The notes beneath the pieces were generated by a model. The model ran no database searches, had not been told where the DNA came from, and was given only the letters and a program-made list of their open reading frames with translations. From assembly GCF_030028105.1 (NCBI RefSeq), contig NC_092371.1, positions 204,288,031 to 204,352,030 on the forward strand: a stretch of 64,000 bases of DNA. The letters are read 5' to 3'. Of this stretch, positions 19,872 through 50,089 are shown piece by piece (position 1 is the first letter of the stretch; the number at the start of each line of letters is the position of its first letter). Origin of the DNA: Mobula birostris (taxonomy: Eukaryota). The translations under genes were made by a program, and so were the position numbers.

Positions 19872-22800
19872 AGAAACATAGAAAACTTACAACACAATAC
19901 AGACACTTCGGCCCACAATGCTGTGCCGAGAATGTCCTTTCTTTAGAAATTACCTCGGGTTACCATTGCCCTCTATTTTTCTAAGCTCTATGTACCTAAG
20001 CAGAAGTCTCTTGAAAGACTATCGTATCCATCTGTCACCACTGTCGACGGTAGCCCATTCCACGCACTCACCACCCTGAGGTTTTTTAAAAAAAAAACTT
20101 ACCCCTGACATCTCCTCTGTACGAACTTACAAGCACCTTAAAACTGTGTCCTCTTGTGTTAGCCATTTCAACCCTGGGAAAAAGCCTCTGGCTATCCACA
20201 TGATCAATGCCTCTCATCATCTTATACAACTCTATCAGGTCACCTCTCATCCTCTGTCACTCCAAGGAGAAAAGGCCAAGTTCACTCAATCTATTCTCAT
20301 AAGGCATGTTCCCCAATCCAGGCAATATTCATGTAAATCTCCTCTGCGTTCTTTCTATAGTTTCCACATCCTTCCTGTGGTGAGGTGACCAGAACTGAGC
20401 ACAGTACTCCAAGTGGCATCTGGCTGGGGTCCTATATAACTGTAACATTACCTCTGGGCTCTTGAACTCAATCCCACGATTGATGAAGGCCAATACACTG
20501 TATGCCTTTTTAACTATGCAGTCAACCTGAGTGTCCTGTAGACTCGGACCCCAAGATCCCTCTGATCCTCCACACTGCCAAGAGTCTTACCATTAATACT
20601 ATATTCTGCCATCATATTTGACCTACTAAAATGAACCACCTCACACTTATCTGGGTTGAACTCCATCTGCCATTTCTCAGCCCAGTTTTGCATTCTATCG
20701 ATGTCCCGTTGTAACCTCTGACAAACTTCCACACTATTCACAACACCCCCAACCTTTGCGTCATCAGCAAATTTACTAACCCATCCTTCCACTTCCTCAT
20801 CTAGGTCATTTATAAAAATCACGAAGAGAAGGGGTCCCAGAACAGATCCTTGAGGCACACCACTGGTCACCAACTTCCATGCAGAATATTACTCGTCTAC
20901 AACCACACTTTGCCTTCTGTGGGCAAGCCAATTCTGGATCCACAAAGCAAGGTCCCCTTAGATCCCATGCCTCCTTATTTTCTCAATAAGCCTTGCATGG
21001 GATACCTTATCAAATGCCTTGCTGAAATCCATATACACTACATTTACTGCTCTACCTTCATCAATATGTTTAGTCACATCCTCAAAGAACTCAGTCAGGC
21101 TCGTAAGGCATGACCTGCCTTTGACAAAGCCATGCTGGCTATTCCTAATCATAATTTGCTTCTCCAAATGTGCATAAATCTTGCCTCTCAGGATCTTTTC
21201 CATCAACTTACCAACCACTGAAGTAAGACTCCCTGATCTATAATATCCTGGGCTATCTCTACTCCCTCTCTTGAATAAGGGAACAACATCCGCAAAGCTC
21301 CAATCCTCCGGAACCTTTCCCGTCCCTGTTGATGATGCAAAGATCATCGCCAGAGGCTCAGCAGTCTCCTCCCTTGCCTCCCACAGTAGCCTGGGGTATA
21401 TCCCGTCTGGTCCCGGTGACTTATTGAACTTGATGCTTTCCAAAAGCTCCAGCACATCCTGTTCCGTAATATCTACATGCTCAAGCTTTTCAGTCCACTG
21501 TAAGTCATCCGTACAATGGCCAAGATCCTTTTCCATAGTGAATACTGAAGCAAAGTATTCCCTAAGTACCTCAGCTATCTCCTCTGGTTCCATATACATT
21601 TTTCCACTGCCACACTTGATTAATCCTATTCTCTCATGTCTTACGCTCTTGCTCTTCACATACTTGTCAAATGCTTTGGGGTTTTCCTTAATCCTGTTTG
21701 TCAAGGCCTTCTCATGGCTCTTGCTGGCTCTCCTAATTTCATTCTTAAGCTCCTTCCTGCTCGCCTTATAATCTTCTAGATCTCTATCCCCTAGTTTTTT
21801 GAACCTTTCGGAAGCTTTTCTTTACTTCTTGACTAGATTTATAAGGGCCTTTGTACACCATGGTTCCTGTACCCTACCAGCCATTCCCTGTCTCATTGGA
21901 ACATACCTATGCAGAACGCCACGCAAATATCCGCTGAACGTTTGCCACATTTCTGCCGTACATTTCCCTGAGAACATCTGTTCCCAATTTATGCTTCCAA
22001 GTTCCTGCCTGATAGCCTCTTATTTCTCCTTACTCCAATTAAATGCTTCCCTAACTTGTCTGTTCCTATTGCTCTCCAGTGCTATGGTAAAGGAGATAGA
22101 ATTGTGATCACTTTCTGCAAAATGTCTCCCACTGAGATCTGACACCTGACAGGTTCATTTCCCAATACCAGATCAAGTACAGCCCCTCCTCTTGTTGGCT
22201 TATCTACATATTGTCAGGAAACCTTCCTGGACACACCTAACAAACTCCACCCCATCTAAACCCCTTGCTCTCGGGAGATACCAATCGATATTTGGGAAAT
22301 TAAAATCTCCTGCCATGACAACCCTTGTTATTATTACATCTTTCTAGAATCTGTCTCCTTGTCTGCTCCTCGATGTCCCTGTTACTATTGGGCGGTCTGT
22401 AAAAACACCCAGTAGAGTTATTGACCGCTTCCTGTTCCTAACTTCCACCCACAGAGACTCAGTATACAATCCCTCTATGACCTCCTTTTCTGCAGCTGTG
22501 ACACTTATCTCTGATCAGCAGTGCCATGACCCCACCTCTTTTACCTCCATCCTTGTCCTTTCTGAAGCATCTGAAGTCTAGCACTCTTAAGTAACCATTC
22601 CTGCACCTGAACCATCCAAGTCTCTGTAATGGTCACAACATCACAGCTCTAAGTACTGATCCACGCTTTAAGCTCATCTGCTTTGTTCATAATACTCCTT
22701 GCGTTAAAATAGACACATCTCACACCATTGGTCTGAGCGAATCCCTTCTCTATCACCTGCCTATCCTCCCTCTCGCACTGTCTACACGCTTTCTCTATTT

Positions 22801-26499: not shown

Positions 26500-29400
26500 G
26501 TAGACTAGTCTAGACGTTTAGGATGAACTGGCTAATTGGATCCAAAATCTGCTAGTGATAGGATGCAGAGGGTAGTGTTGAAAGTTGTTTTTCTGATTGG
26601 GACCTGTACAAATGGAAAGGTTTGCACCTGAACTCCAAGTGAGGGGGGAACCAGTATTCTTGCAGGAAGGTTTGCTAGTGGGTTTGCTCAGGGAGAGGGT
26701 AGTTGGTGGTGCCACATGCAAGTTAGAGAACAGTTTAATGTGGGAAAGGATATGGTGAAGGAGGGAGGGCTTCAGATTTTTTTGTAATGTTGGGCACTTT
26801 TCCAAGGAAGGGAGGGCCTTTACAATTGGGATGGTTTACACCTGAACTGGAAGGGTACCAATATCCTTGTGGGAAGGTTTGCCTGAGGCTCCGGAGGGTT
26901 CCTGTACTGTGGAAGACGTCCTGCCTCGTCCCTGTGCCGAAGATGCTGTGCCCCAGCGGCCTCAATGACTATAGACCGGTGGCATTGACCTCCCACATCA
27001 TGAAGACCCTGGAGAAACTTGTTCTGGAGCTGCCCCGGCCGATGGTCAGGCCACACTCAGATCCCCTCTGGTTCACCTACCAGCCCCGACTAGGAGTTGA
27101 GGATGCCATCGTCTACCTGCTGAACCGTGTCTACGCCCACCTGGACAAGCCAGCGAGCACTGTGAGGGTCACGTTTTTTGACGTCTCCAGTGCATGCAAC
27201 ACCATCCGCCCTACTCTGCTGGGGGAGAAGCTGACAGCGATGGAGGTGGATGCTTCCCTGATATCATGGATTCTTGATTACCTGACTGGCAGACCACAGT
27301 ACGTGTGCTTGCAACACTGTGTGTCTGACAGAGTGATCAGCAGCACTGGGGCTCCACAGGGGACTGTCTTGTCTCCCTTTCTCTTCATCATTTACACCTC
27401 AGACTTCAACTACTGCACAGAGTCTTGTCATCTTCAGAAGTTTTCTGATGACTGCCATAGTTGGATGCATCGGCAAGGGAGATGAGGCTGAGTACAGGGC
27501 TACGGTAGGAAACTTTGTCACATGGTGTGAACAGAATTATCTGCAGCTTAATGTGAAAAAGTCTAAGGAGCTGATGGTAGACCTGAGGAGAGCTAAGGTA
27601 CCGGTGACCCCTGTTTCCATCCAGGGGGTCAGTGTGGACATGGTGGAGGATTACAAATACCTGGGGATACGAATTGACAATAAACTGGACTGGTCAAAGA
27701 ACACTGAGGCTGTCTACAAGAAGGGTCAGAGCCACCTCTGTTTCCTGAGGAGACTCAGGTCCTTTAACATCTGCCAGACGATGCTGAGAATGTTCTACGA
27801 GTGCGGTGGCCAGTGCGATCATGTTTGCTGTTGTGTGCTGGGGCAGCAGGCTGAGGGTAACAGACACCAACAAAATCAACAAACTCATCCGTAAGGCCAT
27901 GATGTTGTGGGGATGGAACTGGACTCTCACACGGTGGTGTCTGAAAAGAGGATGCTGTCTAAGTTGCATGCCATCTTGGTCAATGTTTCCCATCCGCTAC
28001 ATAATGTACTGGGTGGACACAGGAGTACATTCAGCCAGAGACTCATTCTGCCGAGATGCAGCACTGAGCGCCATAGGAAGTCATTCCTGCCTGTGGCCAT
28101 CAAACTTTACAACTCCTCCCTTGGAGGGTCAGACACCCTGAGCCAATAGGCTGGTCCTGGACTTATTTCATAATTTACTGGCATAATTTACATATTACTA
28201 TTTAACTATTATGGTTCTATTACTATTTATTATTTATGGTGCAACTGTAACGAAAACCAATTTTCCCCCGGGATCAATAAAGTATGACTATGACTAGTGC
28301 TGCTCTTGGGGATGGGAAGTAGAGTGCCAGAGCTGCTAGTGAGGTAGTTCTGAGGAAAGTACATGTTAAGCCTATACATGGAACTGAAAGGTTGTGCAGG
28401 ATATATTGTGGATAAGCTAAGAAGTTGGATTAGCATATGGAATTATGATATTGTAGCTATTATTGAGACTTGGTTACATGAGGGGTAGGACTGGCAGCTC
28501 AATGTTCTAAGGTTCTGTTGCTTTATAAAACAATAGTAGAGGGGGACTTAAAGGGGGAATAGTGGTATTGCTCATTAGGGAAAATGTCATGGCATTGTTC
28601 AGGCAGGACAAACTAGGCTGCTGAGGCTGTACAGGTGGAACTGAGATTATATTATAAACCTCCCAAAAGTAAGTGGATTTAGATCAGCACATTTGTGGAG
28701 ACAGTTGCAAGAAAAATATTGGTGCGATAGGTGATTTTAACTTTCCATATATTGACTGGGACTCCCATACTGTCAAAAGACTGGATAGGATAGAATGTCA
28801 AATGTGTTCAGCAAAGTTTCTTTAATATGTAGAGGTCCCAACTAGGGAGTGCGAAACTGAATCTCTTTATTAGGAATGAGATAGGGCAGGTGACAGAGAT
28901 GTGTGTAGGAAAGCAGCTTGGATCTAGTGATCATAATTCCATTAGTTTCAAGATAATCATGGAGAAGGATAACACTGGTTCTCTCGCAGGTGTGGATTTT
29001 TTTTTGCGTGGCAAAGAAATACTTGATAAGTGAGATGCCTTCAGAACTGCAGTGGGATCTGAGCCAACTGGAAAAATGGTAGATGGAATTTAATGAAGAC
29101 TAGTGTGATGTGCTGCAATTTGGCAGGACAAACCAGGTTCAAACTTACACAATGAATGGTAGGGCAGTGAGGACTGCGGTAGTACAGAGGAATCCGGATA
29201 TACAGATCCATACAGACAGGTTTGTAAAAGGAATTTTTGGCACATTGGCCTTCATAAATCTAGAGTATTGATTGGGATGTTATGTTGAAGTTGTATAAAA
29301 CATTGGTGAGGTCAAATTTGGAGCATTATGTGCACTTCTCGTCACCTACCTACCGGAATGATATCAATAACATAGAAAGAGTACAGAAAAATATTTATGA

Positions 29401-33860: not shown

Positions 33861-35565
33861 TAGAAAACATAGAAAATAGGTGCAGGAGTAGGCCATTCGG
33901 CCCTTCGAGCCTGCACCGCCATTTATTATGATCATGACTGATCATCCAACTCAGAACCCCGCCCCAGCCTTCCCTCCATACCCCCTGATCCCCGTAGCCA
34001 CAAGGGCCATATCTAACTCCCTCTTAAATATAGCCAACGTACTGGCCTCAACTGCTTCCTGTGGCAGAGAATTCCACAGATTCACCACTCTCTGGGTGAA
34101 GAAGTTTTACCTAATCTCGGCCCAAAAGGCTTCCCCTTTATCCTCAAACTGTGACCCCTTGTTCTGGACTTCCCCAACATCGGGAACAATCTTCTTGCAT
34201 CTAGCCTGTCCAATCCCTTTAGGATTTTATACGTTTCAATCAGATCCCCCTCAATCTTCTAAATTCCAACGAGTACAAGCCCAGTTCATCCAGTCTTTCT
34301 TCATATGAAAGTCCTGCCATCCCAGGAATCAATCTGGTGAACCTTCTTTGTACTCCCTCTATGGCAAGGATGTCTTTCCTCAGATTAGGGGACCAAAACT
34401 GCACACAATACTCCAGGTGAGGTCTCACCAAGGCCTTGTACAACTGCAGTACTACCTCCCTGCTCCTGTACTCAAATCCTCTCGCTATAAATGCCAGCAT
34501 ACCATTCGCCTTTTTCACCGCCTGCTGTACCTGCATGCCCACTTTCAATGACTGGTGTATAATGACACCCAGGTCTCGTTGCACCTCCCCTTTTCCTAAT
34601 CGGCCACCATTCAGATAATAATCTGTTTTCCTATTTTTGTCACCAAAGTGGATAACTTCACATTTATCCACATTAAATTGTATCTGCCATGAATTTTCCC
34701 ACTCACCCAACCTATCCAAGTCACCCTGCATCCTCTTAGCATCCTCCTCACAGCTAACACTGCCACCCAGCTTCGTGTCATCCGCAAACTTGGAGATGCT
34801 GCATTTAATTCCCTCATCCAAGTCATTAATATATATTGTAAACAACTGGGGTCCCAGCACTGAGCCTTGCGGTACCCCACTAGTCACCGCCTGCCATTCT
34901 GAAAAGGTCCCGTTTATTCCCACTCTTTGCTTCCTGTCTGCTAACCAATTCTCCATCCACATCAATACCTTACCCCCAATACCGTGTGCTTTAAGTTTGC
35001 ACACTAATCTCCTGTGTGGGACCTTGTCAAAAGCCTTTTGAAAATCCAAATATACCACATCCACTGGTTCTCCCCTATCCACTCTACTAGTTACATCCTC
35101 AAAAAATTCAATGAGATTCGTCAGACATGATTTTCCCTTCACAAATCCATGCTGACTTTGTCCGATGGTTTCACCACTTTCCAAATGTGCTGTTATCACA
35201 TCTTTGATAACTGACTCCAGCAGTTTCCCCACCACCAACGTTAGGCTAACCAGTCTATAATTCCCCAGTTTCTCTCTCCCTCCTTTTTTAAAAAGTGGGG
35301 TTACATTAGCCACCCTCCAATCCTCAGGAACTAGTACAGAATCTAACGAGTTTTGAAAAATTATCACTAATGCATCCACTATTTCTTGGGCTAGTTCCTT
35401 AAGCACTCTAGGATGTAGACCATCTGGCCCTGGGGATTTATCTGCCTTCAATCCCTTCAATTTGCCTAACACCACTTCCCTACTAACAAGTATTTCGCTC
35501 AGTTCCTCCATCTCACTTGGACCCTCTGTCCCCTACTATTTCTGGAAGATTATTTATGTCCTCCT
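33861..35565 (-). mobile_element. Young 5'-truncated CR1 with an open 423-aa RT
   Basis: ORF 34240..35511 has all RT motifs (KSPGPDG, DFQKAFD, SGVPQGSVLGP, FADD); (tttctatg) tail. Confidence 0.95.
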
Positions 35566-48340: not shown

Positions 48341-48515
48341 TTGGTCACCTCAGCTTTGACAGCTACAGGGTATGGATTGTAATTAACTTGAGTATTTGGT
48401 TATGTAAAGAATACTACTCATTTGATGAAATATTTAAAACAAAAATGGATTCTACAATGCTATTAGCATATAGTCAATTATATTTTTTGGGGATGTTTGT
48501 GGTTGTGTCTGACAG

Positions 48516-48645
48516 ATTCATTCAGCAAAAATTGGAGCGAGCCACCCCTGCGGAACGCCAGATGGTTTTCAGTGAAATCCTGCAAGCAGCATATCAGCTG
48601 ATGACTGATGTGTTTGGAAATTATGTAATACAGAAGTTCTTTGAG
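48516..48645 (+). CDS. PUM2: PUM2 exon K, PUF repeats 1-2 ([19 protein letters not shown]...[11 protein letters not shown])
   Basis: gacag acceptor, gtaggc donor; 130 nt, phase 2 to 0. Confidence 0.97.
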
Positions 48646-48876
48646 GTAGGCATATTTTCTGAAGCTTACTTGATAATTATTTTAATATAATGGCTGTTTT
48701 AATTAGCTGTTCTATTCTGAAGATTTGGGTGTGCTAGTAACATCAGGGCCAAGGATGGACTGTCTCGTCTTTCAAAGTTCAAAGTAAATTTATTATCAAA
48801 GTACAAAATGCTACCATATGCAACCCTGACATTCTTTTTCTTGCAGACATTTGCAATAAATCCAATATAGAATAAT

Positions 48877-49479
48877 TGATTTGATAGCACCGATCTGCCT
48901 TGAAGGACAATGGAGTTTTTCCACAAGCTTGGGCAGAAAAAATGGAAATCCTCGGGTGCCCAGTTGTCAAAGTCCCCTTAGCCTCACCAGTGTAGTCGAA
49001 AGAAAAGCAAAGCAATATGTTTGGCACCAACTTGGATGCAGGAACTGCCAGAAGGATGTTCAGTGATGTGCAGCTGCCATAGGGGCTCCACTCCAGATTT
49101 TCTGTCTGGGTTTACTCCTGTAGTCTTCTCTCCGGAGGCTGCCCAAAAGGCTGTGGGGCTATTTACGCTTAGCTGGGGATCTGAATTCATGAGAACCGGT
49201 GGGCCTGCTTGCTATATGTTCAGGGGCCAGACCTCCTCCCTGTCCTCTGTAGTTCAGCCTGACTTTGAGAGGAGTTCAGTTTCCATGTGTCGCCAGCAAG
49301 GCGGCACTACATGAGGTTTGCTATTGGAGGACTCTATATACTGGCAACGAGAGACTTCCACATTCAGCTCTCCTTTTTGTGAGACTGCTAGCCAGTGGTG
49401 GAAGCTGAAAGCGAGAGCAACGAGCACAACCCACTACACTACCACGTTAGATGTGTCACAACCATTTGACACACAATTC
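48877..49479 (-). mobile_element. Non-autonomous, ORF-less RTE-derived element (5' UTR joined to 3' tail)
   Basis: TSD agaataat (48869-48876 / 49480-49487); RTE-like 3' end ccattgtccttcaaggcagatcggtgctatc; 5' ribozyme fold; RTE assignment recalled, not searched. Confidence 0.7.
49244..49474 (-). ncRNA. HDV-like (double pseudoknot) self-cleaving ribozyme
   Basis: P1 GUGUGUC/GACACAU with G.U at the cleavage site; P2 CCUC(A)UGUAGU/ACUACAGAGG; P3 GCC/GGC; L3 GCCUUGCU; P1.1 CC/GG; P4 CUGA(A)CU/AGUCAG; J4/2 G-C-U-G-A. Confidence 0.8.
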
Positions 49480-50089
49480 AGAATAATAACCGTTATAGAA
49501 TCAATGGAAGTCCACACCAACTTTGTGATTCAAACAGTGTGCAAAAGACATAAACTGTGCAAATACAAAAAGAAAGTAGTAATAGTAATAATTAAATAAG
49601 CAATAAATATGGAGAACATGAGATGAAGGGTCTTTGAAAGTGAGTCAGTAGGTTGTGGGAACATTTCAGTGATGGGGCAAGTGAGGTTGAGTGGTTATCC
49701 CCTTTGGCTCAAGAGCCCAATGGTTGAGGGGTAATAACTGTTTCTGAACCCGGTAGTATGAGTCCTGAAGCTCCTCTACCACCTTCCTGATGGCAGGAAG
49801 ACAGCATGACCTGGGTGGTGGGAGTTCCTGATAAATTGTGCTGCTTTCCTGCAACAGTGCTTCATGCAGATGTGCTCAGTGGTGGGGAGGGCTTTATCTG
49901 TGAAGGGCTGGCCCTTTGAGCCTTCTCTGTGATAATGAATACTATAGCTGATTGATTTTTCAGCCTTGTCTGGATCCCTCAATTCCTTTAGTGCCCGGAA
50001 GTATAATAATCATTGTTTAATACATTGAGCTACCGCAGTATGGCAGGATAGAGAGTTCCAAAGTTCTACCACTAATCTGTACTTCCTTC

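What the first reader, a model, noticed from the sequence alone, without database searches (positions are those of the whole stretch)
49244..49474. Complete HDV-like ribozyme fold at the 5' end of an ORF-less ~600-bp retroelement
Seen on the minus strand, with every HDV helix in the correct order. P1 is GUGUGUC (49474-49468) with GACACAU (49291-49285) and has the canonical G.U at the scissile position. J1/2 is ~150 nt. P2 is CCUC(A)UGUAGU/ACUACAGAGG, P3 is GCC/GGC, P1.1 is CC/GG, P4 is present, and the catalytic C in J4/2 is at 49257. The predicted cut is only 5 nt inside the TSD-defined 5' end (49479). Known: R2, R4 and RTE LINEs use 5' HDV-like ribozymes. Inference: this is a ribozyme-headed, internally deleted non-autonomous family that excises itself from read-through transcripts instead of using a Pol III promoter. 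L3 reads GCCUUGCU rather than UCCUCGCU, so this copy may be weakened.
Basis: partly seen in the sequence, partly recalled or inferred. Interest (0 to 1): 0.85.

Follow-up and report, generated by a model that had tools for sequence, protein, structure and literature searches.

The report
Decayed delta-type ribozyme heading a ray retroposon
A 603-base non-coding jumping-gene copy in a ray Pumilio-gene intron begins with a fold like the self-cutting hepatitis delta RNA; this kind of element is already known, and this copy looks mutated.

Summary
The fold is unlikely to be chance. My own descriptor hits once in the window, against 1 of 150 shuffles for the full fold. The P3-L3-P3' letters match the HDV ribozyme at 12 of 14. 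Two lines of comparison support a real ancestral ribozyme.

- **Ray paralogs:** almost all differ from this copy at two core positions, and both changes improve the fold: L3 G->U and one more P4 pair.
- **A related repeat family in an unnamed organism:** rebuilt from ORF translations in two frames, it keeps J4/2 with the catalytic C, P3, P1.1 and P2. It loses one P2 pair on both strands and shows an A.U->G.C change in P4.

Boundaries (8-bp duplication, GC shift, end of homology) fit a 603-bp ORF-less insertion in the 3'UTR of an older LINE, antisense to a Pumilio-family gene.

Not shown:
- cleavage;
- conservation of the P1 5' strand, which no relative covers;
- the LINE parent;
- any Rfam hit (none found).

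A local hairpin competes with P1.

This scan has already reported ribozyme-headed retroposons elsewhere in this genome. Verdict: new member of a known kind, this copy probably weakened. Confidence about 0.6, interest 0.35.

The parts
49480..49487 (.). 5' copy of the putative target-site duplication ATTATTCT (read on the minus strand)
   Evidence: An exact shared word of 8 or more arises in 6.3% of 20000 shuffles of the two flanks. A second shared 8-mer, ATTCTATA, also exists.
49475..49479 (-). 5 extra bases (GAAUU) between the duplication and the first base of P1
   Evidence: Read as junction filler by inference only.
49468..49474 (-). P1 5' strand GUGUGUC. The predicted cut lies 5' of G49474.
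   Evidence: Conservation in other copies could not be tested.
49451..49458 (-). Local partner (UGACACAU) that forms an 8-bp hairpin with 49474-49467 and competes with P1
   Evidence: MFE folds. Duplex energy is -9.4 kcal/mol, against -7.8 for P1.
49317..49467 (-). J1/2 insertion of 151 nt
   Evidence: On its own it folds to a closed multibranch domain at -35.1 kcal/mol. Its 3' part, 49398-49317, is 44 of 65 determined positions identical in the Q family.
49306..49316 (-). P2 5' strand CCUC(A)UGUAGU
49292..49305 (-). P3 (GCC), L3 (GCCUUGCU) and P3' (GGC). The G at 49302 is private to this copy.
   Evidence: In one search, 49302 C>A on the + strand shows in 8205 of 8328 depth units and 107 contigs of run X1, and likewise in the other 3 runs.
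49283..49291 (-). P1 3' strand GACACAU, then GG of P1.1
   Evidence: The Q family has GAUAC-U followed by GG.
49259..49279 (-). P4 hairpin
   Evidence: The family majority has G at 49265. In the Q family, pair 49276.49262 is G.C where this copy has A.U.
49254..49258 (-). J4/2 GCUGA, with the putative catalytic C at 49257
   Evidence: Identical in 7 of 7 Q-family members.
49244..49253 (-). P2 3' strand ACUACAGAGG
48877..49243 (-). Non-coding body and tail of the element
   Evidence: No Pfam family for its ORFs. Translations of relatives cover 48884-49401 in shifting frames.
48869..48876 (.). 3' copy of ATTATTCT
49480..49911 (-). Host repeat, part 1: 3' end of a 5'-truncated, very abundant LINE (end of its ORF plus an AT-rich 3'UTR)
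48771..48876 (-). Host repeat, part 2: rest of the LINE 3'UTR and its tail
   Evidence: In one search, loose ends at 48770-48772 have unrelated flanks, and the loose-end consensus at 48805 is homologous to 48806-48835. GC is 0.31.

Best explanation
This is an old, mutated copy of an ORF-less non-LTR retroposon whose first 232 bases carry an HDV-like self-cleaving ribozyme with a 151-nt insertion in J1/2.

In active source copies the element would have no promoter of its own. It would be transcribed as part of a longer read-through RNA. The ribozyme would then cut just 5' of the first base of P1, which releases an RNA with a defined 5' end. A LINE reverse transcriptase would copy that RNA into new sites. 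These steps are inferred.

What is shown: the fold is present, the ray family majority and a foreign relative keep its core, and the insertion boundaries fit.

This copy sits in the 3'UTR of an older LINE, antisense to a Pumilio-family gene. It carries two private changes that weaken the fold: U->G at L3 position 1 and G->A at the end of P4. I therefore take it to be a dead or weak copy.
For: - All helices are present.
- The own descriptor gives 1 hit in the window. In 150 shuffles, 4 gave the core and 1 gave the full fold.
- P3-L3-P3' matches the HDV ribozyme sequence printed in PMC5718131 (passage) at 12 of 14. The expected number of such hits is 0.12 per window.
- Only two near-fixed differences between this copy and its paralogs fall in the 74-nt core, and both improve the fold. 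49302 gives L3 UCCUUGCU, which is 13 of 14 to HDV. 49265 adds pair C49272.G49265.
- In the Q family, J4/2 GCUGA is kept in 7 of 7 members and P3 can pair at 3 of 3 positions in 7 of 7. P1.1 can pair at 2 of 2 in 6 of 7. In 6 of 7, P2 can pair at 9 of 10 positions, and the tenth pair (49313.49247) is missing on both strands. Pair 49276.49262 is G.C in 7 of 7, against A.U here.
- All 14 determined substitutions in the core lie in L3 (3), the P1 3' strand (1) or the P4 hairpin (10). None lies in P2, P3, P1.1, J1.1/4 or J4/2.
- J1/2 loops of 216-498 nt occur in self-cleaving silkmoth R2 ribozymes (PMC3774820, passages).
- Boundaries: an 8-bp duplication, GC of 0.50 inside against 0.31-0.35 outside, and relatives' homology ending at 48884-48891.
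Against: - No HDV-like Rfam family matches, even at E<=10 or in truncated mode.
- The fold is not the MFE and the stretch is no more stable than shuffles.
- The P1 5' strand prefers a local 8-bp hairpin.
- No relative or listed paralog piece covers 49463-49474, so P1 covariation and the family's 5' end are untested.
- The two long paralog contigs that run on unaligned both stop at 49462. They are X5 record 22, with 108 letters left over, and X7 record 32. They may be the same locus in two close species.
- The duplication is only marginally significant (p about 0.06).
- The core is no more conserved overall (53 of 67) than the stretch downstream (18 of 19).
- The Q-family nucleotides are inferred from two reading frames of different paralogs. 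All seven members share one frame-B partner, so they are not independent.
- P0006 and P0004 keep L3/P3 poorly, as far as one frame can show.
- No LINE partner was identified.
Confidence: 0.62

Rival explanations
1. The element is just a conserved non-coding interspersed repeat, for example a SINE with a conserved central block. The HDV-like pattern would be a resemblance without catalysis. The conserved letters would then serve another role or reflect uneven decay.
For: - No Rfam hit.
- Folding energy is ordinary.
- Conservation is as high or higher outside the ribozyme: 18 of 19 downstream, and blocks such as the one translated as RGSTPDFLSGFTP at 49081-49119 recur in most of the 31 relatives.
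- My descriptor was written after the fact.
- An A-box-like 11-mer (10 of 11) lies at 49439-49429. The box consensus is recalled, and I estimate about 0.1 such matches by chance in 600 nt.
Against: - Both private differences of this copy restore HDV features in the family majority.
- Substitutions in the Q family avoid P2, P3, P1.1 and J4/2, and they cluster in P4, which still forms a stem.
- A P2 pair is lost on both strands together.
- ARAGORN and the Rfam tRNA model find nothing.
Confidence: 0.2
2. The ribozyme core (P2, P3, L3, P1.1, P4, J4/2) is real, but the reader's P1 5' strand and cut site are wrong. The family would begin near 49462, and the true substrate strand would lie elsewhere or be supplied differently. 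The nearness of 49474 to the boundary would then be a coincidence of this copy.
For: - Long paralog contigs stop at 49460-49462 (table 8).
- The strand at 49474-49467 is tied up in a local hairpin with 49458-49451.
- A 7-mer complement within 200 nt accompanied 1 of the 4 chance cores found in 150 shuffles.
Against: - The closest 7-of-7 partner within 200 nt upstream of P2 is the one at 49474; the script reports only the nearest.
- It gives the canonical G.U first pair and lies 5 nt from the duplication.
- Losing 12 terminal bases from an alignment at about 84% identity is expected from soft-clipping.
Confidence: 0.12
3. The element is a retroposon oriented on the + strand, with its 3' end at 49479. 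The terminal hairpin 49451-49474 would be its reverse-transcriptase recognition stem-loop. The minus-strand HDV-like pattern would then be antisense and meaningless.
For: - Depth and contig counts rise from 48953 (14 contigs) to 49036 (108 contigs), as 5' truncation on the + strand would give.
- There is a stem-loop at the + strand 3' end.
Against: - Relatives in other assemblies do cover 48884-48990, so the dip is not a family boundary. The reads tool itself warns that a dip in depth is no finding.
- After the rise, contig counts are flat at about 75-117.
- The structure-preserving pattern of change fits the minus-strand fold.
Confidence: 0.04

Closest known systems
R2 retrotransposon HDV-like ribozymes, especially the silkmoth ones (PMC3774820; passages and section 16 read)
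   Same: - The ribozyme sits at the 5' end of a promoter-less non-LTR element.
- P1 is 6-7 bp, P2 at least 5 bp, and P4 is variable.
- There is a catalytic C in J4/2 and a conserved G in L3 that pairs with a U in L3.
- Active examples have J1/2 loops of 216-498 nt.
   Different: - R2 inserts only in 28S rDNA and encodes its own protein.
- This element is dispersed, ORF-less, and found here in an intron inside another LINE.
- J1.1/4 is 3 nt here, against 0-2 in R2.
R2 SIDEs and the R2/R1 hybrid SIDEs (PMC3414825, abstract); NARTc of Trypanosoma cruzi (PMC3383444, abstract in the listing)
   Same: These are short non-autonomous elements that keep a 5' HDV-like ribozyme plus a 3' end used by a LINE's machinery.
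   Different: For those elements the autonomous parent is known. Here no parent or shared 3' end was identified.
RTE and baggins elements with HDV-like ribozymes, and drz-Agam-2-1 with its structured J1/2 (P1.2) domain (PMC6765202 passages; PMC4908430 passages)
   Same: - Promoter-less elements transcribed from introns or from upstream elements.
- A structured J1/2 domain that brings P1 and P2 together.
   Different: - Relationship to RTE was not tested here.
- The Rfam drz-Agam models give no hit.
- J1/2 is longer here, and it starts with a hairpin that sequesters P1.
Genomic HDV ribozyme (sequence as printed in PMC5718131)
   Same: P3-L3-P3' GCC UCCUCGCU GGC matches at 12 of 14 in this copy and 13 of 14 in the ray family majority. 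GG follows the 7-nt P1 3' strand. J4/2 has C-N-R-A.
   Different: - J1/2 is 151 nt.
- P2 is 10 bp with a bulge.
- The P4 sequence is unrelated.
- One extra base stands between the catalytic C and GAA.
555-564-bp ribozyme-headed RTE-derived retroposons reported by this scan elsewhere in the same ray genome (notes s1-145255, s1-145075, s1-145706, s1-145293)
   Same: Same genome, similar length, and an HDV-like fold in the first ~190-230 bases.
   Different: Those notes describe an extra hairpin in L3. Here L3 is canonical and the insertion is in J1/2. I could not see their sequences, so I cannot say whether this is the same family.

Membership tests
HDV-like self-cleaving ribozyme (fold class) | Nested double pseudoknot with P1, P2, P3, P1.1 and P4 in the canonical order | tested here: met
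   every listed pair forms except C49272/A49265. The family majority has G at 49265.
HDV-like self-cleaving ribozyme (fold class) | Catalytic C in J4/2 | tested here: met
   C49257 lies in GCUGA. The same 5 letters stand in 7 of 7 Q-family members.
HDV-like self-cleaving ribozyme (fold class) | L3 with CC for P1.1 and the conserved G that pairs with an L3 U (PMC3774820) | tested here: inconclusive
   CC and G are present. The U is replaced by G in this copy (49302) but is present in the ray majority and in the Q family.
HDV-like self-cleaving ribozyme (fold class) | Helices supported by compensatory change across relatives | tested here: inconclusive
   There is one A.U->G.C change in P4 and one P2 pair lost on both strands. 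P1 is not covered by any relative. The relatives' nucleotides are inferred from translations.
HDV-like self-cleaving ribozyme (fold class) | Match to a curated covariance model (Rfam HDV, CPEB3 and drz families) | tested here: not met
   no such hit at E<=10. These models do not allow a 151-nt J1/2 and do not model the pseudoknot (the second point is recalled, not tested).
HDV-like self-cleaving ribozyme (fold class) | Site-specific, Mg-dependent self-scission | not testable with these tools
   A bench assay is needed.
Ribozyme-headed non-autonomous non-LTR retroposon (SIDE / NARTc type) | Ribozyme cut site at or next to the element's first base | tested here: inconclusive
   In this copy P1 starts 5 nt inside the duplication. 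Paralog alignments reach 49460-49462 only.
Ribozyme-headed non-autonomous non-LTR retroposon (SIDE / NARTc type) | Dispersed copies flanked by target-site duplications | tested here: met
   In one search, about 75-117 contigs per run carry the family letter across 49036-49422 (61-63 at 48998-49003), in 4 runs of 3 organisms. The 8-bp duplication has p of about 0.06.
Ribozyme-headed non-autonomous non-LTR retroposon (SIDE / NARTc type) | No coding capacity | tested here: met
   The longest ORF overlapping the element (48877-49479) is 97 aa, on the opposite strand. No Pfam family at E<=0.1 for the 3 minus-strand ORFs tested that overlap the element.
Ribozyme-headed non-autonomous non-LTR retroposon (SIDE / NARTc type) | 3' end shared with an autonomous LINE that mobilises it | not tested
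No similar sequence exists elsewhere in the window.
tRNA-derived SINE (Pol III) | tRNA-like head with A and B boxes | tested here: not met
   ARAGORN finds nothing, and there is no tRNA match at E<=10. Only an A-box-like 11-mer is present, and I saw no B box by eye.

The most novel reading that the evidence does not exclude
The element belongs to an old retroposon superfamily shared by several animal lineages. Its conserved ~150-nt J1/2 domain, together with the 5' hairpin that sequesters the P1 strand, would act as a folding switch that decides when the delta-type ribozyme cuts. That would be a regulated form of 5' processing not described for retroelement ribozymes.
Probability: 0.08. Interest if true: 0.6.

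Novelty: new member of a known kind. Interest (0 to 1): 0.35.

Why it matters
[quoted passage not shown] A search for 'HDV-like ribozyme' with 'elasmobranch' found nothing. The same with 'shark' found one paper, on R2 distribution, seen as a listing only.

A ray family with a canonical core and a very long J1/2 extends that picture to cartilaginous fish. Its many natural variants could be used to study how large J1/2 domains and competing hairpins affect cleavage. It does not change the principle.

Tried and rejected
**Rfam.** The whole window at gathering scores gave nothing relevant. So did three sub-stretches at E<=10.

**tRNA-derived head.** ARAGORN found nothing. I rejected this reading.

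**Other copies in the window.** blastn at word sizes 11 and 7 found none.

**Collection scans with a 21-letter core pattern.**
- Metagenome contigs: 0.
- Viral contigs: 0.
- Prokaryote genomes: 1, a chance match in a Prosthecobacter MAG that lacks the rest of the motif.

**The search for related loci with alignment A2.** Nothing was confirmed in metagenome or viral contigs. Alignment A1 was too divergent to use.

**Protein searches.**
- The search for homologous proteins with the two + strand ORFs alone found nothing.
- The protein atlas gave nothing usable.
- The listing of cluster members gave no names or accessions, so the organisms of the relatives are unknown.

**An earlier reading I dropped.** From the depth profile and the joints 48800-48806 -> 49552, I first took the family to run on to 49551 and the element's last ~100 nt to be private. 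I dropped this for three reasons:
- a LINE paralog contig crosses 49552;
- the GC profile places the boundaries at 49479 and 48877;
- relatives cover 48884-48990.

**Other scans.** The bacterial promoter/terminator scan was irrelevant.

**Literature.** I did not ask for paper supplements. The supplementary ribozyme lists of the 2009 and 2011 genome-wide searches, cited in PMC6765202, may already hold fish examples.

Full report
**What is there.**
- P1: 49474-49468 with 49291-49285, 7 pairs, the first a G.U.
- J1/2: 151 nt.
- P2: 49316-49306 with 49253-49244, 10 pairs and one bulged A.
- P3: GCC/GGC.
- L3: GCCUUGCU.
- P1.1: CC/GG.
- P4: a hairpin at 49279-49259.
- J4/2: GCUGA, with the C at 49257.
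- The 8-mer ATTATTCT stands at 49487-49480 and 48876-48869. The element is therefore 603 bp (49479-48877), and P1 starts 5 nt inside it.

**Is it chance?**
- I wrote the descriptor after seeing the site. It asks for P3, CC in L3, GG after a 7-nt strand, P4 of at least 4 bp, C-N-R-A, and P2 of at least 6 bp. It finds this site as the only core match on both strands of the window.
- Of 150 dinucleotide-preserving shuffles, 4 gave any core match. One gave a core with a 7-of-7 P1 partner within 200 nt.
- The P3-L3-P3' 14-mer of the HDV ribozyme, as printed in PMC5718131 (passage), matches the window only here, at 12 of 14. The expected number is 0.12, and 12 of 100 shuffles gave a hit.
- Multiplying these partly independent rates is my own rough inference. 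It gives under one such site per genome of a few gigabases.

Against this, no Rfam family of the HDV class matches. I tried the gathering score over the window, E<=10 over 1 kb, and a truncated scan of 49236-49322. The 241-nt stretch folds no better than shuffles: z = +0.46, with 134 of 200 folding at least as well.

**Surroundings.**
- The window has no N.
- 49911-49552 on the minus strand is the end of a LINE ORF plus an AT-rich 3'UTR. It belongs to a very abundant family, with summed contig depth of 10^5-10^6 against about 10-25 for unique flanks. Its tail ends at 48771, where loose ends have unrelated flanks.
- GC is 0.31-0.35 in 49552-49670, 49480-49551 and 48806-48876. It is 0.50 in 48877-49479, including 0.47 in the last 108 nt.
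- A paralog contig runs unbroken across 49552 (49515-49684).
- I therefore read the 603 bp as one insertion into that LINE's 3'UTR.
- The duplication alone is weak. An exact shared word of 8 or more arises in 6.3% of 20000 shuffles of the two flanks, and a second 8-mer is also shared.
- A PUF-repeat exon lies on the + strand at 48511-48645. The element is therefore antisense to its host gene.

**Ray paralogs.**
- Contigs of four runs from three coded organisms were laid at 80% likeness or more. Across 49036-49422, about 75-117 contigs per run carry the family letter (61-63 at 48998-49003).
- Listed paralog pieces differ from this copy by about 15-18%.
- Within the 74-nt core, only two differences are near-fixed among the listed ones (40 were shown; 373 more were not).
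  - 49302 C>A on the + strand: 8205 of 8328 depth units and 107 contigs in X1, and similar in the other runs. This makes L3 UCCUUGCU, 13 of 14 to HDV.
  - 49265 T>C on the + strand: 7434 of 7671 in X1. This adds pair C49272.G49265 in P4.
- Both changes improve the fold. If the fold were an accident of this copy, I would expect the family majority to break it instead.
- Limits: all runs are contigs, so starts and strands cannot be read. The two long paralog contigs that run on unaligned both stop at 49462, and none of the listed pieces covers 49463-49514.
- Depth falls to about 50 at 48886-48939. The tool warns that such dips are no finding, and the next section shows that stretch is conserved elsewhere.

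**Relatives in other assemblies.**
- The + strand ORF 49021-49311 is antisense to the ribozyme and surely not a gene. A full HMMER scan with it gave 7 hits at E<=0.001. Two are unrelated tandem-repeat proteins and five are true relatives.
- A profile search gave 31 hits among 2896 candidates, from ENA, Logan and NCBI contigs of up to 4.9 Mb, all without names.
- Laid on the window by tblastn, they cover 48884-49401 in shifting frames, as a non-coding repeat would. So the element's 3' part is family sequence, and homology ends within about 8-15 nt of the duplication.
- One family does allow inference. I call it Q: P0022 plus P0045-P0050, seven paralogs from one cluster at 90% identity. Q reads the core in one frame, and a frameshifted paralog (P0027) reads it in another. 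Codon choices that satisfy both frames fix most bases: 38-48 of 42-50 frame-B residues are matched, depending on the member.
- Results, member by member:
  - J4/2 is GCUGA in 7 of 7.
  - P3 can pair at 3 of 3 positions in 7 of 7.
  - P1.1 can pair at 2 of 2 in 6 of 7.
  - P2 can pair at 9 of 10 in 6 of 7, with the tenth pair (49313.49247) absent on both strands. In P0047 it is 6 of 10.
  - Pair 49276.49262 is G.C in 7 of 7, where this copy has A.U.
  - L3 begins with U and keeps CC and G.
  - The P1 3' strand reads GAUAC-U in 6 of 7 members.
- In the majority version, 53 of 67 determined core positions are identical, with 4 gaps. All 14 substitutions lie in L3 (3), the P1 3' strand (1) or the P4 hairpin (10) (my count; totals).
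- P0006 and P0004 share the two P2 deletions. They keep L3/P3 poorly, as far as a single frame can show.
- Caveats: the bases are inferred, and the seven members share one frame-B partner. 'Can pair' includes ambiguous positions. The stretch downstream of the ribozyme is even better conserved (18 of 19).

**Mechanism.** Most likely (confidence 0.62) this is a decayed member of a ribozyme-headed, ORF-less retroposon family.
- Inferred: source copies are transcribed by read-through, the ribozyme cuts 5' of the first base of P1, and a LINE enzyme copies the released RNA.
- Known from the literature: long J1/2 loops (216-498 nt) are compatible with cleavage in silkmoth R2 (PMC3774820). Structured J1/2 domains speed up cleavage in drz-Agam-2-1 (PMC4908430).
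- Here J1/2 alone folds to a closed domain at -35.1 kcal/mol.
- The P1 5' strand also forms a local 8-bp hairpin at -9.4 kcal/mol, against -7.8 for P1. That could slow or gate cleavage.
- This copy has lost the L3 U that pairs with the conserved L3 G (PMC3774820). It is also antisense to its host gene. I take it to be inactive or weak.

**Comparison and novelty.**
- It works like the R2, RTE, baggins and L1Tc ribozymes, and like the non-autonomous SIDEs and NARTc (PMC6765202 passages; PMC3414825 abstract).
- Membership of the fold class is met for architecture and for the catalytic C. It is inconclusive for covariation and not met for curated models. Cleavage is untestable here.
- Earlier notes of this scan report 555-564-bp RTE-derived, ribozyme-headed retroposons in this same genome. 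I could not compare sequences, so this may be the same superfamily drawn differently.
- It is a new member of a known kind.

Noticed in passing
48511-48645 (+): An exon that encodes Pumilio-family (PUF) repeats (Pfam E = 1.3e-14), with GT right after 48645. Run X5, guessed to be RNA, covers 48508-48669 at depth 72-129 and has none in the flanking bins, so it behaves like RNA.
   Followed up: partly
49480-49911 and 48771-48876 (-): A 5'-truncated copy of a very abundant LINE 3' end. Its ORF end reads ...HHPGHAVF... in one frame. In most other copies the middle of the 3'UTR differs, which produced many joints 48800-48806 -> 49552 in the reads table.
   Followed up: partly
49451-49474 (-): An 8-bp hairpin that ties up the P1 5' strand. 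On the + strand it would be a terminal stem-loop.
   Followed up: partly
48886-48939 and 49185-49194: Holes in the depth of paralog contigs, at about 30-200 against thousands beside them. Relatives elsewhere nevertheless cover 48884-48990. The cause is unknown: it may be a filter of the reads tool or local divergence.
   Followed up: no
49021-49599 (+): One + strand frame is open for 193 codons apart from a single stop at 49312-49314. Public protein collections hold dozens of such spurious ORFs translated from relatives of this repeat.
   Followed up: partly
P0005, P0008 (proteins of relatives): The conserved block (PDFSS.F..EAF....NHKAV.LF) occurs twice in one ORF, which suggests a tandem duplication inside some relatives of the element.
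   Followed up: no
20961-21704 (-), 26787-27891 (+), 34243-35511 (-): Reverse-transcriptase ORF fragments of other retroelements. The second carries a C-terminal match to Pfam ALKBH8_N.
   Followed up: no
49429-49439 (-): The 11-mer UAGUGUAGUGG resembles a Pol III A box at 10 of 11 (consensus recalled). There is no B box and no tRNA-model match.
   Followed up: yes
L001:1900-1920: The 21-letter core pattern matches once in a Prosthecobacter MAG. The next letters and the context do not fit the ribozyme. About one chance hit is expected in a collection of that size (my estimate).
   Followed up: yes
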